DNA of 63,747 nt, counting the filler, from Reticulomyxa filosa (lineage: Eukaryota; Protista; Foraminifera), in the NCBI GenBank assembly GCA_000512085.1. It is 15 parts of 15 records of this genome, joined end to end, with 100 filler letters (N's around TTAATTAATTAA, not from the genome) between each part and the next. Parts side by side here need not be neighbours in the genome. Positions count along the whole stretch, not along the records: positions 1 to 9,705 come from ASPP01001255.1; 14 more parts are not named here. One strand, given 5' to 3'. The stretch's first letter is position 1; each line of letters begins with the position of its first letter. Below the pieces are notes generated by a model. It worked only from the letters and a program-made list of their open reading frames with translations. It was not told where the DNA came from and made no database searches. Both the position numbers and the translations under genes were made by a program. Shown one piece after another: positions 1 to 7,560 of the stretch.

Positions 1-345
1 ATTCATAACTGGATTCACTTTCATCTAAATCAGAATTAGATAAATTTAAATATTTTTTCTTTTTCCATACACTTTCATATTTCATAATCCAAATATGTTT
101 ATATTCAGTTGGCCCTTGTCCACCAAATGATAATAAAATATGATAATATTTGGAATTATATTGAATACGTTTATAAATAACACATTGTCCAAATAAAGAT
201 TGATTAAAATTATAAAAAGAATAAGTTGAAACATATTTAAATAAATTTTTGGATGTATGAAATGAAAAATAATGATTTGTAAAAAAACTTCCACAAATAA
301 TAATTTTATTTGAATTTGGTATGGATATACATTGAGAAGTGTAAT
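1..345 (-). CDS. Kelch-like beta-propeller family protein, partial (runs off the window start)
   Basis: Manual translation of a stop-free frame missing from the ORF track: SQCISIPNSNKIIICGSFFTNHYFSFHTSKNLFKYVSTY...LFGQCVIY...ILLSFGGQGPTEYKHIWIMKYESVW. Kelch-type GG motifs; probably the same family as the 54471-54918 fragment. Confidence 0.65.
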
Positions 346-1175
346 GCATATAAGATGAAATAGTATATATGTTCGTTTCGTTTGTTTATACAATCAACAG
401 AAAAAAAGTAAATTATTTGTATAATCAAATTCTGTTTGTTCTAACGACTGCTTTTTCTAAATTTATAAAAAAAAATTTAAAAAATAGTATAAATGTATGT
501 GGTATCAAAAAATTGCACATACATAACACTTTTTAAAAGAAAATTTTTTACAGTTTACGATGTCTGTCCTTTGAATATTTGAATTTTTTTAAAATCCATT
601 TCTCGTCTTCTTTTTTTTTTAGTTTTTAGATTTACATATCAGCTCACCCTTTTTTGACGACAAAAACAATCATTGTACTTTATTTTTGTTGAAGAACAAT
701 TACCTCGGACTACTTTATAAAATGATCGATCCGTCGAATTTAATATTCGGAGTCAAATCCATTTTATCAACTTTGTCTCTTTCAGACTGTTTAGTTTGTT
801 TATTAAATATGTCTGTGTTGCTTACAAACAATATATCTATAAATGAAATTGAAAAAGTTTACCAACTGTTATATTAAAATTATTTTGTTCCATGCGTGTA
901 TAACTTCGAGAAGTTTTTTTCAAACAAATATACAAATATGTGATCAAAAATATGCTTTATAAAAAAAAACAAGAATTTTGAAAATTCACAAAAATTTGAG
1001 AGAAAAATTGACTTATATTTTTCTTTTATTGCTATTGAAAGTTCTTTCAAAAGTTATTCACAGTAATACGACAAAATAATTAATGAAAACAGCTTCGCTT
1101 TGACCTCTGTCCCTCCAAATAGATGTCTATTTGAAATTGTATTTAAAAAATGTATGCTCTCGTGTGTAATTGTCA

Positions 1176-2345
1176 TTATCCCCAAATTCGAATTGTGTCA
1201 TCCCAAGAACATGATACAATTGTGCTTTCATTTGGTGAAATATCCACAGCTGACACTAGCTTAACATTCCCTTCTAGCCTCTGTATTTCATAGCCCGATT
1301 TCACATTCCACAATCGAATTGTCCTATCATTTGAACAAGAGACAATAGTTCGACCGTCTCGAAAATATTTCGCAGCTCTCACAATTTCTGTGTGCCCCTC
1401 TAATTGTTTTAATTCTGTTCCTGATTCAACATCCAATATCCGAATTTTAGTGTCCCATGAACATGACACAAGAGATCGGCCATCTGGAGAAAAATTTGTA
1501 CGCATTACATAATCTGAATATTTTTGTAATTCTTTTAATTTTTCACCTGACTTTGCATCCCACAGAATAATTGTTTTATCACTAGATGATGATACAAGTG
1601 TTCGATCATCTGGTGAAAAATGTACATCATTTATTGTATCTTGGTGACCCACCAATTTTTGAATTTCTTTTCCGGATTCCACATCCCAAATCCTTATTGT
1701 CTTGTCAGACGAACCTGACACAATTTGTTTACCATCAGAGGAAAAATTCACACTCCATATCCACTTCAAATGCCCTTCCATTTTTTTAATTTCCTTTCCT
1801 GATGTTGCATCCCACAATCGAATTGTTTTGTCACATGAGCATGAAACAACACTATGTCCAGATGGTGAAAATTCTGCAGCATTAACCCAATCGGTATGTT
1901 CTGCAAAAACCTGAATGCTTTTTCCTGATGCAATGTCCCATATTTGGGCCGTATTATCAGATGATGACGAAACAACCCTTCGACCATCTGGTGAAAATCG
2001 TACATAATTTACTGTTTTGGTATGTCCTCGTAGAATTTTCAATAATTGAAAATATTTGCTCTATGTTTTCAAGTTCGTAATCTAATAATAGCAATAGACA
2101 TTTTCTTGGACTTAAAGAAAAACAATTAGTATTACTTAACATAACTGATAACAAGTTTGTCAAAATCATGGATCCATCCTAATCTTACATTCAAACTTCG
2201 AAGCCAGTTCTGAATTACAATTTTTACTTCTTTCTCTGTCTGTTTTTTTTGTTAGCTGTTTTACAGTGATTTGCTAGTCCGAAATATTGGACACGCTTAC
2301 CAACTGTGGGATCGAGATCCCTTGTTGGTCGTTAGTAGTATTCAT
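1176..2345 (-). CDS. WD40-repeat protein (7 blades) with N-terminal LGWIxDFDK module; 3 exons: 2345-2301, 2239-2141, 2060-1176
   Basis: Seven GH...WD repeats. Two phase-0 GT-AG introns (2300-2240, with CTAAC branch site, and 2140-2061) join MNTTNDQQGISIPQL|TEKEVKIVIQNWLRSLNVRLGWIHDFDKLVISY|SKYFQLLKILRGH in frame. Confidence 0.88.
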
Positions 2346-3483: not shown

Positions 3484-4943
3484 TTAATGGCAAGCCACAT
3501 ATTGCACGACATCGGAATCAAATGGGTAATATCGGAGAATCGTATTACTGTCGCTCAAATACTGACAATTTTCAGCTGAGTCCAAATCATCGAGATAACC
3601 GAGTACAATTTCGACCACTCCTTTTTCTCCAAACTTTCGGGTCAATGCATCGTAACGCATGTTTTGGAGCCACTCCTTTTTGCGATAGAACTTTTGAATA
3701 CTGGTTCGGAATCGGTATGCGTCATATTGTTTGGAGGCAAACTCTTTGATGAAAATGCACGGAACGCACGGAAAATTATAGATCGTGTATACACAAGTTA
3801 TAGAAAACAGTAAAACAGAGAACCAAAACATCAAAGTTTGCGAAATATCATATTGAAAGTTGAACGTCATTATCGATTCTTCTTCGCCATTACTATTACC
3901 ACTTCCATTTCCATTGTCATCACTCCCGTACGCACCACATAATGAATTTGTAGTGAAATTGATAGACATAAGGTAATAAATGGAGGGATAGTCATTACGA
4001 AACAAATGAGAGGATGGCAACGTAATCTCCATTTTGAGGCCGTCCGTACTTTGGCGCACTGTCTCGCAACGAAACGAAGTCACTCCATTTCCACGATTGC
4101 CACTATAATTGTATTTGGGCAGCTCCACAAGAGACTCCAGATCAGAGACTAGTTCCACTGCCAAACATGCCTCCGACTGGAATTTTCTTTGCCATGGCAA
4201 TTGCAGCTTTTTTTAAAAAAATTAAAAAATCAAAGTTGATTTGAATTGAATGAAATCGAGTGTTTGGAATAGGAGAAAGAGAGGGAAAAAAAGGATGCCA
4301 TTTTGCACACCTTAAAAGTGATGGTAAACGAATGGACAATAGATTGGTAATGAAGCAAGTAATAAAACATGGTAGTTTCGGGTTCAGACGCGGACTGAAG
4401 TGTGTAGTGAGGATAGTCATAACAGGGATTGACATGGTAACGTCGATGCTGCAAAGTGAACAACGGTATGGTAACATATTGATACGTAATCCGATAATTG
4501 CACATTGCAAATTTGTTATTGGTAAGTCCAAGACGGATATTTGTGTGTGGTGCAAACAGTTTTTGATTGGACCATTGGCACACACAACCACTTACAGTAT
4601 TATTTAGCTGACAACAGTTTTCAAGTGAGATGTCGCTATTGTTTTTGATTTGTTTTCCTGTTATTTTTTCTTCGATAGTCATGTTCCATGGAGTGTCACA
4701 ATTCGAATTAACTTTTGCAAACACTTGATATACGTTTGGATATTGCACTAACGTTGTTTTATTGTACTCTATTGTTGTTACTGTTGATTCGTTCATCCTC
4801 AGTCCTACCAATTTTGTCCCAGGATTCAAAAACTCACTGTCGATTGCTGTTGGCTGCAGTACTGACGCCAATACAAATAGTGTCACCGTTGCACACATCA
4901 AAAGACACAGTCCGTAAAGCTTAAATAGTGTTGTTATTTCCAT
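3484..4943 (-). CDS. Uncharacterised membrane protein (N-terminal hydrophobic anchor, Cys/N-glycosylation-rich luminal part, second TM near the C-terminus); 2 exons
   Basis: ORFs 4230-4943 and 3484-4200 join in phase 0 through a GT-AG intron at 4310-4207 (TITFK|LQLPW). Hydrophobic stretches GLCLLMCATVTLFVLASVL and LMFWFSVLLFSITCVYTIY. Confidence 0.65.
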
Positions 4944-5383: not shown

Positions 5384-7560
5384 ATGTTGCGATTAGATTA
5401 TCATCAACAACACTACAATGATTGTATATATGACAACTTTGAAAACGCATGTTTTGACAAGAAGTGGATATCAGTGTTGCATGAAGACAAAAAGATAAAC
5501 AAATACGTTTGCTTTGTTTGCAAACAAGTTGCGAACAAAGTAATGCGCAGTACCGAAAACGAAAAGGCTTTGATAGTTGGAAGGAAGTGTCTGAAAAAAT
5601 ATAAAAATGACACAAGCATGCATGATCCAAACCAAAGCCGCCATAATTACCCCTACGATATCGATGCCTCAATGCAAGTGCAAGTAGAAAATTTACATGT
5701 GGTGTGCTGGCAACAATATCAACTCGATGTGCAATACACTAAAACTTTGGAGAAGAGAGAAGGCAAGTATCTTCCAATGCTGAACACCGCAGTATGCACA
5801 TTCCGAGGAAAACTCAAATGCATGAAAGAGCATTTGGAGCAGTCATGTCAACTTACCAAATGGAGATTTTACATCAAATCCGTTGAGCTCAATGCGTCGC
5901 AGCAAAAAATTGAGCAGCTGGAAGTTAATAAAACGTACCTATGTTTTTTGTTGTTTGGAACAAAAATATGGAGCCAATAAAACTCAGGGCAAAATATATG
6001 TGACAGAAAAGAGTAGTAAAATTGGAAAATGAAAATAAACAATTGAAATTGCAAGCAGAGTCCAATACAAAAAATGAAATTCATTCGTTTAAAGAGAAAA
6101 CAAGCGCCAAGCCACCAACAGAATTGTCAATTGAATCAGATCAATACGAACTAGGTTTTATTTGTATTTTGAGTTGTTTTTAAAAAAGAAAATTTTTAAG
6201 GCAAAAAAAAAAAAAACAACTTATTTGCCAAGATTACTCCCTTTTTTTTGTTTTCTGCAAAGATAAATATTGTTTCAAAAATGCATATAAAAACAAAAAT
6301 TGATCCAAACTAGGAAAGCTTTACCAAGAAGAAACAACAGATTCTAACTTTGGATCCAAACACGTTAACCTTGTGCGTTAAAAATGTGCATAAGTATGTG
6401 CGTGCACAAAAAAAAAAAAAATGAAAAAAAGATAAAGTGATAACTATTGATGCAAATGTATTTCCCCTAAAATACAAACTAAAAGAAGCAGAAAAATAAT
6501 GACAACAATGACATGTAGCAATCGAGTGCGGCTGTTGGACAAGTTGAAAGTGAATGTGAAAAGGAAATGAAAGAGTTGGAGGCATCGCCACAAAGGAAGC
6601 AAGTCAAAATTAAAAACGAAATAGAACAAGAAAGTGATGACGAAATTGACAATATTCCATTCCGTTGGAGCAAAGTTGAGCGTCCAAGCGAATTAAGAGT
6701 ATTGGAACAACACACAAGCAAATTGAAATGTGTACAATTTTCACCAGATGGACTCGCAATTGTTTTTGCGGCGGACAAATGTGCTGAAATTCAATCGATC
6801 CAATCGCATTGCAAAATGGCCACACAATTCAATGGCCATTCGAACATTGTGAAATAGTGTTCGCTTTTCTCCCGATGGTCGTTGTATGGTTTCTTGTTCA
6901 TGGGATAAAACAATTCGATTGTGGAGTACAAAGACAGGTAGAGAACTCACAGCATTTAATGGACATTCTGATGTGATTAGGTGTGCACAATTTTCACCGG
7001 ATGGTCACACGATTGTGTCGTGCTCACGTGATAGGTCCATTCGCTTGTGGGATATCGCCACTGGCCGGGAATTACAATTCTTCGGGATACACTCGAAAAG
7101 TGTGGATTGGGTGCAATTTGCTCACGATGGCCACTCCATTGTATCATGCTCTTGGGATCTAACTGTTCAATGGCTTGATATAAAACAAAATAAAGCTGTC
7201 AAAGTATTCACCGGACATTCTGACGCTGTACACAGGATCAACCTTTCACCTGATGGATGCAAGATTGTTTCTTGCTCCAGTGACAAAACTATTCGATTAT
7301 GGGACGTCTCGACAACTAAGCAACTTTATGCGCTTAACACGCATTCTGGAGACGTCAATTGTGTTCAATTTTCACCAGATGGTCGCACAATTGCATCTTG
7401 CCATGAAGACAATGCTATTCGCTTGTGGCGTTGCGATCCCACAAACCCGATACATATAATCAAAGGGCATTCTGCTGCTGTCAATGATGTTTGCTTTTCA
7501 CCTGACGGACACAGAATTTTGTCATGCTCGTCAGATAAAACTATTCGATTGTGGAAATGA
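5384..7560 (+). CDS. Degenerate RING/TRAF-type zinc finger - coiled coil - WD40 protein (TRAF7-like architecture), multi-exon
   Basis: CFVCKQVAN...GRKCL, then a TRAF-like C...C...HLEQSC finger, coiled-coil exons, and WD40 repeats at ~6700-7560. One extra A at ~6853 (GTG AAA TAG instead of GTG AAT AGT) splits the WD40 frame. Joining these parts into one gene is an inference. Confidence 0.6.

What the first reader, a model, noticed from the sequence alone, without database searches (positions are those of the whole stretch)
2141..2239. A mobile ~33-aa single-exon module shared by unrelated repeat-protein families
Seen: TEKEVKIVIQNWLRSLNVRLGWIHDFDKLVISY (2239-2141, N-terminal to WD40), SKKEIKCIIEYWTQILKIKLGWIDDFDKIIMKY (54578-54471, C-terminal to Kelch) and AEDIELILQHLIRVQQIGFGWINYFDKIFINY (45790-45695, between TPR and WD40), plus a decayed copy at 704-786. 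Each intact copy starts a phase-0 exon. Two are preceded by the same ...QL|gtaa junction, and two are followed by ...Y|gtta. Established: F-box, SOCS/BC-box and BTB adaptors are short helical modules fused N- or C-terminally to WD40, Kelch, ankyrin or TPR substrate-binding repeats. Inference: this is a lineage-specific, exon-shuffled adaptor, possibly a cullin-ligase recruitment box, behind a large receptor repertoire. I do not recognise it as a named domain, and it lacks canonical F-box or BC-box consensus residues.
Basis: partly seen in the sequence, partly recalled or inferred. Interest (0 to 1): 0.85.

Follow-up and report, generated by a model that had tools for sequence, protein, structure and literature searches.

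The report
Foraminifer-specific helix-loop-helix box on propeller proteins
A 99-base exon in this Reticulomyxa filosa gene encodes a previously unnamed 33-residue helix-loop-helix box that is attached to WD40, Kelch and probably TPR repeat domains in at least 215 protein clusters of this organism; it looks like a shared interaction handle, but its partner is unknown.

Summary
Window 2239-2141 (minus strand) is a 33-codon exon with phase 0 at both ends. It lies between a 15-codon start exon and a seven-repeat WD40 exon.

- **Distribution:** a profile of the box finds 215 proteins (E <= 0.001) among 1.84 billion representatives. All 35 whose source was checked are Reticulomyxa filosa.
- **No named relative:** nothing matched in Pfam, Protein Data Bank sequences, Foldseek or the ESM Atlas.
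- **Architectures:** box then WD40 is dominant (98 of 108 proteins with enough downstream sequence). Kelch, box, four residues and stop also occurs, as do Kelch-box-WD40 and, weakly supported, TPR-box-WD40.
- **Exon borders:** eleven intact genomic copies keep the exon borders, conservation stops at those borders, and dN/dS is about 0.3.
- **Fold:** AlphaFold2 with 149 copies predicts helix 2-16, loop, helix 23-32. The box is not the propeller-closing strand.

Box subtypes follow the partner subfamily, so a few shuffling events were followed by large duplications.

The cullin-ligase idea could not be tested. A homodimer prediction gave no verdict. My best guess is a docking handle for a shared partner (confidence 0.4), with self- or cross-pairing of box-bearing proteins as the main rival.

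The parts
2301..2345 (-). Exon 1 of the WD40 gene: ATG plus 14 codons, ending ...PQL, followed by gtaagc
   Evidence: Translation; sequence
2240..2300 (-). Intron 1, 61 nt, gtaagc...aacag
   Evidence: The length fits the R. filosa mean intron of 87 bp (PMC13746701). Splicing is inferred; no RNA run was listed
2141..2239 (-). The box exon: 33 codons, phase 0 at both ends, encoding the helix-loop-helix module
   Evidence: profile score 58.6; AlphaFold2: helix 2-16, loop 17-22, helix 23-32, mean pLDDT 78.5
2061..2140 (-). Intron 2, 80 nt, gttaag...acatag
   Evidence: The alternative acceptor at ...ttattag runs into a stop codon in frame
1176..2060 (-). Exon 3: short linker with the propeller-closing strand, seven WD40 repeats and the stop codon (1178-1176). 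With exons 1 and 2 it gives a 342-residue protein
   Evidence: WD40 E 1.5e-76, 7 stretches
709..791 (-). Decayed copy of the box exon (five indels, stop codons in every frame)
   Evidence: nhmmer with a profile of five intact exons, E 8.8e-4; frames
857..893 (-). Exon-1-like remnant upstream of the decayed copy: ATG...cagttg followed by gtaaac, the same junction letters as at 2306-2295
   Evidence: Read directly; not tested statistically
2..385 (-). Start of a neighbouring Kelch-family gene, cut by the edge of the piece. It belongs to the family whose members carry the box at their C-terminus
   Evidence: BLASTP against P0196 residues 20-103: 37% identity, E 5e-12

Best explanation
Shown: the exon encodes a real protein module restricted, as far as the data show, to Reticulomyxa filosa. 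It has 33 residues and is under purifying selection. AlphaFold2 predicts two amphipathic helices joined by a five- to six-residue loop. Near-invariant positions are W12, R14, G21-W22-I23, F26, K28 and Y33. The module sits outside the repeat domains. It is found about six residues before the closing strand of seven-bladed WD40 propellers, at the very C-terminus of a Kelch family, and as the only link between Kelch and WD40 in fused proteins.

Inferred: a 33-residue hairpin in which about 40% of residues are large hydrophobics cannot stay exposed. It most likely works as a docking handle whose hydrophobic face is buried in another protein. I commit to the reading that all box-bearing proteins dock onto one shared, invariant partner. 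The variable WD40, Kelch or TPR domain would then act as the recognition end and the box as the common connector. This is the same logic as F-box with Skp1, BC-box with Elongin C, or the helix-loop-helix of DCAF proteins with DDB1. A ubiquitin-ligase adaptor is the leading specific candidate, at about half of this probability. The family grew by a few exon-level fusions followed by massive gene duplication and decay.
For: - Exon structure and selection: 215 hits for the profile. Eleven intact genomic copies keep the borders. dN/dS is about 0.31 at dS about 0.95, and exon identity is 72% against 39% in the adjacent intron.
- Conservation boundaries: conservation collapses immediately outside the 33 residues.
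- Fold: helix-loop-helix prediction with 149 copies.
- Position relative to the propeller: in a full-length paralogue the box does not pack on the propeller, and the closing strand comes after it.
- Several architectures: WD40 lies downstream in 98 of 108 proteins. Kelch lies upstream in about 8 of 91 by Pfam, and more by sequence. Kelch-terminal copies end four codons after the box in three of three loci, and one such gene is followed by another Kelch gene, not by WD40.
- Invariance across subfamilies: the same eight positions are near-invariant in all subfamilies despite near-saturated synonymous divergence. This fits one common binding surface better than drifting pair specificities.
- Family dynamics: a large family with tandem clusters and decayed copies resembles the birth-and-death pattern of ligase substrate-receptor families (general knowledge, not tested here).
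Against: - No partner was identified and no binding was tested.
- No similarity to F-box, SOCS/BC-box, BTB or any other profile.
- None of the seven WD40 repeats of the window's protein has the WDxR signature common in DDB1-binding WD40 proteins (read; the signature is from memory).
- The structure prediction is of moderate confidence (pLDDT 78.5). With a shallow alignment the same region came out as one long low-confidence helix.
- Expression and splicing are unverified because no RNA run was listed.
- Invariance would also be expected if all boxes pair promiscuously with each other.
Confidence: 0.4

Rival explanations
1. Self- or cross-association module. Two boxes form a four-helix bundle, as LisH motifs or the PKA RII dimerisation/docking domain do. 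This would dimerise propellers, or pair a Kelch-box protein with a box-WD40 protein. The fused Kelch-box-WD40 genes would then be the 'Rosetta stone' for that pairing.
For: - Complementary placement: the box is at the C-terminus of Kelch proteins and the N-terminus of WD40 proteins, and a single box joins the two in fusions.
- Kelch and WD40 box genes are neighbours in L007 and in the window.
- Solved hairpins of this size that align best include dimerisation domains (PKA D/D, rabies P, CENP-B), but only at Z 3.2-4.5, which is not significant.
- LisH is also about 33 residues long and sits before WD40 or with Kelch (general knowledge).
Against: - No LisH, RIIa or Dpy-30 profile match in 149 copies.
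- Dimerisation motifs are not usually the conserved core of families with hundreds of members.
- Near-invariance across subfamilies is not required for pairwise association.
Confidence: 0.3
2. Another role for a real module: for example an autoinhibitory or regulatory helix pair acting on its own repeat domain, a localisation or cytoskeleton tether, or a degron.
For: Purifying selection and sharp domain borders show function but do not specify it. R. filosa has an unusually elaborate microtubule transport system (general knowledge).
Against: The same box serves WD40, Kelch and probably TPR domains, which argues against a tailored intramolecular contact. AlphaFold2 does not pack it on the propeller.
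Confidence: 0.2
3. No independent function: a leader segment that looks conserved only because the gene families expanded recently.
For: Box subtype follows partner subfamily. The assembly is fragmentary and may hold near-duplicate contigs (N50 3.6 kb; PMC13746701).
Against: Synonymous divergence between copies is near saturation (dS about 0.95) while dN/dS is about 0.31. Flanking residues and introns are not conserved. Hits are representatives of clusters at 50% identity.
Confidence: 0.07
4. An integral part of the propeller, such as a closing strand or a structural cap, and not a separate module.
For: It is nearly always within ten residues of the first WD40 strand.
Against: It is predicted to be helical, not a strand. 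The closing strand is the following segment, residues 53-58 of P0015. The box also ends Kelch proteins that have no WD40.
Confidence: 0.03

Closest known systems
F-box (Skp1-binding box of SCF substrate receptors)
   Same: A short helical box fused to WD40, Kelch or other repeats. It forms very large lineage-specific families with tandem clusters and pseudogenes, and the box is the only part conserved across architectures.
   Different: No sequence match (0 of 149 copies). The box has two predicted helices in 33 residues, against three helices in about 45. It lacks the L-P and other F-box signature residues. It occurs at the C-terminus of Kelch, whereas F-boxes are N-terminal. Skp1 binding was not tested.
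Helix-loop-helix of DDB1-binding WD40 receptors (DDB2, CSA and other DCAFs)
   Same: A helix-loop-helix directly before a seven-bladed WD40 propeller, serving as the docking element (known structures, from memory).
   Different: No family profile exists to test against. The window's repeats have no WDxR signature. The Kelch C-terminal placement has no DCAF counterpart. DDB1 binding was not tested.
LisH motif
   Same: About 33 residues and two helices. It is found before WD40 (LIS1, TBL1) and with Kelch (muskelin), and it is an oligomerisation handle outside the propeller.
   Different: No match to the Pfam LisH profile. The loop is longer and holds a conserved G-W. Conservation is far stronger, and copy number within one genome is far higher.
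SOCS box / BC-box
   Same: A short helical box at the C-terminus of WD40, ankyrin or SPRY receptors that docks on Elongin C. The C-terminal placement resembles the Kelch-box proteins.
   Different: The BC-box consensus is absent and there is no profile match. Most copies here are N-terminal.

Membership tests
F-box (PF00646, PF12937 and related) | Sequence match to the F-box profile | tested here: not met
   hmmscan of the window copy at E <= 1 and of 149 copies at E <= 10 gave no F-box family. This is a sequence-to-profile test only; no profile-to-profile comparison was possible.
F-box | Binding to Skp1 | not testable with these tools
SOCS box / BC-box | Profile match, or the BC-box consensus (S/T/P)-L-x3-(C/S/A)-x3-(L/I/V) | tested here: not met
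   No Pfam match. The column make-up shows no such pattern.
BTB/POZ | A domain of about 95 residues matching the BTB profile | tested here: not met
   The box has 33 residues with sharp conservation borders and no Pfam match.
LisH | Sequence match to the LisH profile | tested here: not met
   0 of 149 copies matched at E <= 10.
LisH | Two-helix motif that homodimerises into a four-helix bundle | tested here: inconclusive
   A two-helix hairpin is predicted. The dimer prediction returned no verdict, so dimerisation remains open.
DDB1-binding WD40 receptors (DCAF) | Helix-loop-helix immediately before a seven-bladed WD40 propeller | tested here: met
   Helix 2-16, loop, helix 23-32, followed by seven WD40 repeats. 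This is a resemblance in layout only.
DDB1-binding WD40 receptors (DCAF) | WDxR (DWD) signature in the repeats, and binding to DDB1 | tested here: not met
   None of the seven repeat ends of the window's protein reads W-D-x-R. The signature is not obligatory for DCAFs. DDB1 binding was not testable.
WD40 propeller (as an integral strand) | The segment forms a beta strand of a blade | tested here: not met
   The segment is predicted helical in both models. The closing strand is the next segment.
PKA RIIa / Dpy-30 dimerisation-docking domain | Profile match or a significant fold match | tested here: not met
   No Pfam match. Fold alignment reached Z 3.8-3.9, within the noise for a 33-residue hairpin.

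The most novel reading that the evidence does not exclude
The box defines a foraminifer-specific class of substrate receptors with at least 215 protein clusters. Through it, WD40, Kelch and TPR recognition domains would plug into a ubiquitin-ligase (or comparable) core by a docking element unrelated in sequence to F-box, BC-box or BTB. This would be an independent invention of the 'box plus repeat' receptor system.
Probability: 0.2. Interest if true: 0.75.

Novelty: new variant of a known kind. Interest (0 to 1): 0.45.

Why it matters
If the box is a docking handle, it marks out at least 215 protein clusters as one functional system in a giant syncytial protist whose biology is almost unexplored at the molecular level. 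It also gives a simple bait, a 33-residue peptide, for finding the core of that system.

It is a clean example of a symmetric phase-0 exon reused across repeat-protein families in Rhizaria. This bears on how widespread exon shuffling is outside animals.

There is a practical point too. About half of the public R. filosa gene models read through the splice donor after the box, so the box could be used to repair those models.

Tried and rejected
- **Own-genome search:** not available for this window.
- **Word-indexed homologue search on the box region of P0015:** it found only the query itself. The region is too short for the word filter, so this says nothing.
- **Homodimer prediction of the box (two copies):** the tool returned no verdict (score 0.00). 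This is no evidence for or against binding. The alignment was not used by the tool.
- **RNA evidence:** no run was listed.
- **Fold searches:** the full-length paralogue model returned only generic WD40 propellers. Foldseek on the box model returned nothing. The exhaustive aligner gave at best Z 4.5 to generic hairpins. The ESM Atlas feature search gave no usable hit.
- **Protein Data Bank sequence search with the profile:** only a chance-level hit, E 3.2.
- **Genome paper:** the R. filosa genome paper (Glöckner et al. 2014) is not held in the library. No held paper mentions Reticulomyxa together with Kelch.
- Exons were searched separately, and a full-length public paralogue (P0015) stood in for structure prediction.
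- **Rejected readings:** propeller-closing strand, and an amyloid-type signalling motif. The second was considered because of the N-terminal and C-terminal placement, but the sequence has clear helical periodicity, the prediction is helical, and no NOD domain is present.

Full report
**What is in the window**

The piece is AT-rich eukaryotic DNA. Its WD40 exon is 45-62% identical to many Reticulomyxa filosa proteins, so it comes from that foraminifer or a very close relative.

On the minus strand I read a three-exon gene:
- Exon 1 is 2345-2301: ATG plus 14 codons, ending QL and followed by gtaagc.
- Intron 1 is 61 nt.
- Exon 2 is 2239-2141.
- Intron 2 is 80 nt.
- Exon 3 is 2060-1179 plus the stop codon. 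It has seven WD40 repeats.

Both introns are phase 0, and their lengths fit the species' mean of 87 bp (PMC13746701). Splicing is inferred because no RNA run was listed.

**Is the box real and recurrent?**

Fourteen of 18 R. filosa WD40 paralogues fetched first carry the same segment just before the propeller. A fifteenth, the partial P0120, begins with it and was added by eye. A 33-position profile of 16 copies (A1) was scored against 1.84 billion representative proteins. It found 215 at E <= 0.001 and 37 at E <= 1e-10. All 35 hits whose source I checked are R. filosa.

An alignment of 149 distinct copies (A3) has 60% mean column identity. W22 is invariant, and W12, G21, I23, F26 and Y33 are at 94% or more. 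R14, K28, I8 and I18 are above 80%.

**Not a named domain**

- Pfam gives nothing for the window copy at E <= 1.
- For 149 copies at E <= 10, Pfam gives only seven unrelated families, six matched by a single copy and one by two. None is an F-box, SOCS box, BTB, LisH, RIIa or Dpy-30 match.
- The profile finds no Protein Data Bank sequence, best E 3.2.
- Foldseek finds nothing with the box model.
- An exhaustive structural alignment tops out at Z 4.5 on generic helical hairpins.
- The ESM Atlas feature search has no usable hit.

**Architectures**

- Of 108 hit proteins with at least 60 residues after the box, 98 have WD40 there. By linker sequence they fall into at least three WD40 subfamilies.
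- Of 91 with at least 60 residues before the box, about 8 have Pfam-detectable Kelch repeats. More are recognisable by sequence. One to two have WD40 upstream, probably merged neighbouring gene models.
- A Kelch family ends with the box plus four residues and a stop. Examples are P0122, P0196, P0154, P0194 and P0199.
- P0165, P0163, P0226, P0217 and P0040 are Kelch-box-WD40.
- TPR is weaker. P0240 has a TPR-like tail running into the box. Locus L006 has a TPR_1 match (E 6.5e-6, just under Pfam's threshold) about 1 kb upstream of its box exon.

**Exon structure elsewhere**

Six-frame profile scans of seven public R. filosa loci plus the window give eleven intact copies.
- Seven of eight WD40-linked copies have GT directly after codon 33. 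The eighth has it two codons later.
- Three of three Kelch-terminal copies lack a donor there. They run four more codons to a stop.
- In L007 such a gene is followed by another Kelch gene, not by WD40. The C-terminal placement is therefore genuine and not a truncated model.
- An AG sits directly before codon 1 in seven of eleven copies, and one to four codons upstream in two.
- In TPR-linked L006 the open frame starts about 15 codons earlier.
- In 72 of 149 public protein models the residue after Y33 is V, followed by junk. This is read-through of the GT donor and is independent evidence for the intron position.

**Selection and history**

Pairwise dN/dS over the eleven exons is about 0.31 at dS about 0.95. 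The 52 usable pairs are not independent. Exon identity is 72%, against 39% in the first 60 intron bases. The copies are therefore old, and the peptide is constrained.

A tree of 68 boxes labelled by context needs 10 label changes, against 34.7 on shuffling (0 of 500 shuffles as low). With 33 columns most branches are unresolved. Kelch-linked boxes group together. The Kelch-box-WD40 fusions P0165 and P0163 carry Kelch-type boxes in front of a WD40 of the window's subfamily. This pattern fits a few fusion or shuffling events within or next to the box exon, followed by large duplications. It does not fit continuous mobility.

Decayed copies exist:
- window 791-709 (E 8.8e-4 with five indels), with an exon-1-like remnant at 893-857;
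- L003 1066-1164 and L007 4146-4048.

The window's decayed copy lies between the WD40 gene and the start of a Kelch-family gene at 385-2.

**Structure**

With 149 copies as the alignment, AlphaFold2 folds the box as helix 2-16, loop 17-22 and helix 23-32. Mean pLDDT is 78.5.

In the full-length paralogue P0015, modelled with 15 sequences, the propeller is confident. The box region came out as a single low-confidence helix that does not touch the propeller. The closing strand is the next segment, residues 53-58.

Both helices have a continuous hydrophobic face: positions 5, 8, 9, 12, 13 and 16 in the first, and 23, 26, 29, 30 and 33 in the second. Such a small, greasy hairpin must be buried in an interface.

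**Mechanism**

Shown: a constrained, exon-bounded helix-loop-helix box outside the repeat domains, reused at either end of them.

Inferred: it is a protein-protein docking element.

I favour docking to one shared partner (0.4). The same eight positions stay near-invariant across all subfamilies. The family also has the size, clustering and decay typical of adaptor-box receptor families. A ubiquitin-ligase core is the leading candidate within that reading.

The main rival (0.3) is box-box pairing. It is suggested by the complementary Kelch C-terminal and WD40 N-terminal placement and by the fused genes. The one dimer prediction I could run returned no verdict and counts for nothing.

Other roles (0.2), no function (0.07) and an integral propeller element (0.03) follow.

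**Comparison with the known**

In layout the box works like an F-box, a BC-box, the helix-loop-helix of DCAF proteins, or LisH. It is a member of none by any test available here (see the membership table). I file it as a new variant of a known kind: a new sequence family with a familiar design logic.

**Limits**

- Only the best 150 of the 215 hits were seen.
- Taxon restriction rests on 35 checked hits, and few foraminiferal genomes exist for comparison.
- No expression data were available, and no partner protein sequences were available.

Noticed in passing
window 5384-7560 (+): A second WD40 gene without the box. ORFs at 5384-5980, 6022-6183, 6567-6857 and 6886-7560 appear to be its exons. 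The N-terminal part is Cys-rich (CxxC pairs) and is followed by a coiled-coil-like stretch with no Pfam match; the last two ORFs carry WD40 repeats. It shows that not all R. filosa propeller genes of this type use the box.
   Followed up: partly
window 3484-4943 (-): Two adjacent ORFs of 237 and 238 residues, probably one gene. The start is hydrophobic and looks like a signal or anchor segment. There are several N-x-S/T sites and no Pfam match.
   Followed up: partly
public R. filosa protein models (for example P0131, P0136, P0143, P0168, P0174, P0188): About half of the deposited gene models (72 of 149) read through the GT donor after the box. They continue as V plus intron-encoded junk, or end there. 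This is a systematic annotation error that the box profile could be used to correct.
   Followed up: partly
L007 205-6229: A cluster of three box-bearing genes on one 7.4-kb contig: one box-WD40 gene (minus strand) and two Kelch-box genes (plus strand). A decayed box copy lies at 4146-4048 between the two Kelch genes.
   Followed up: partly
L003 1066-1164 (+): A decayed box exon with two stop codons that still keeps tag| and |gttatg at its borders. It lies upstream of the Kelch-box-WD40 gene.
   Followed up: no
P0121 and P0187: P0187 has WD40 repeats on both sides of its single box. P0121 has two boxes, each followed by WD40. Both are probably neighbouring genes merged by the gene predictor and not true two-propeller proteins.
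   Followed up: no
window 857-893 and 2295-2306 (-): The same letters, cagttg followed by gtaa, end the start exon of the intact gene and the remnant upstream of the decayed copy. This suggests the duplicated unit included exon 1 and intron 1, not the box exon alone.
   Followed up: no
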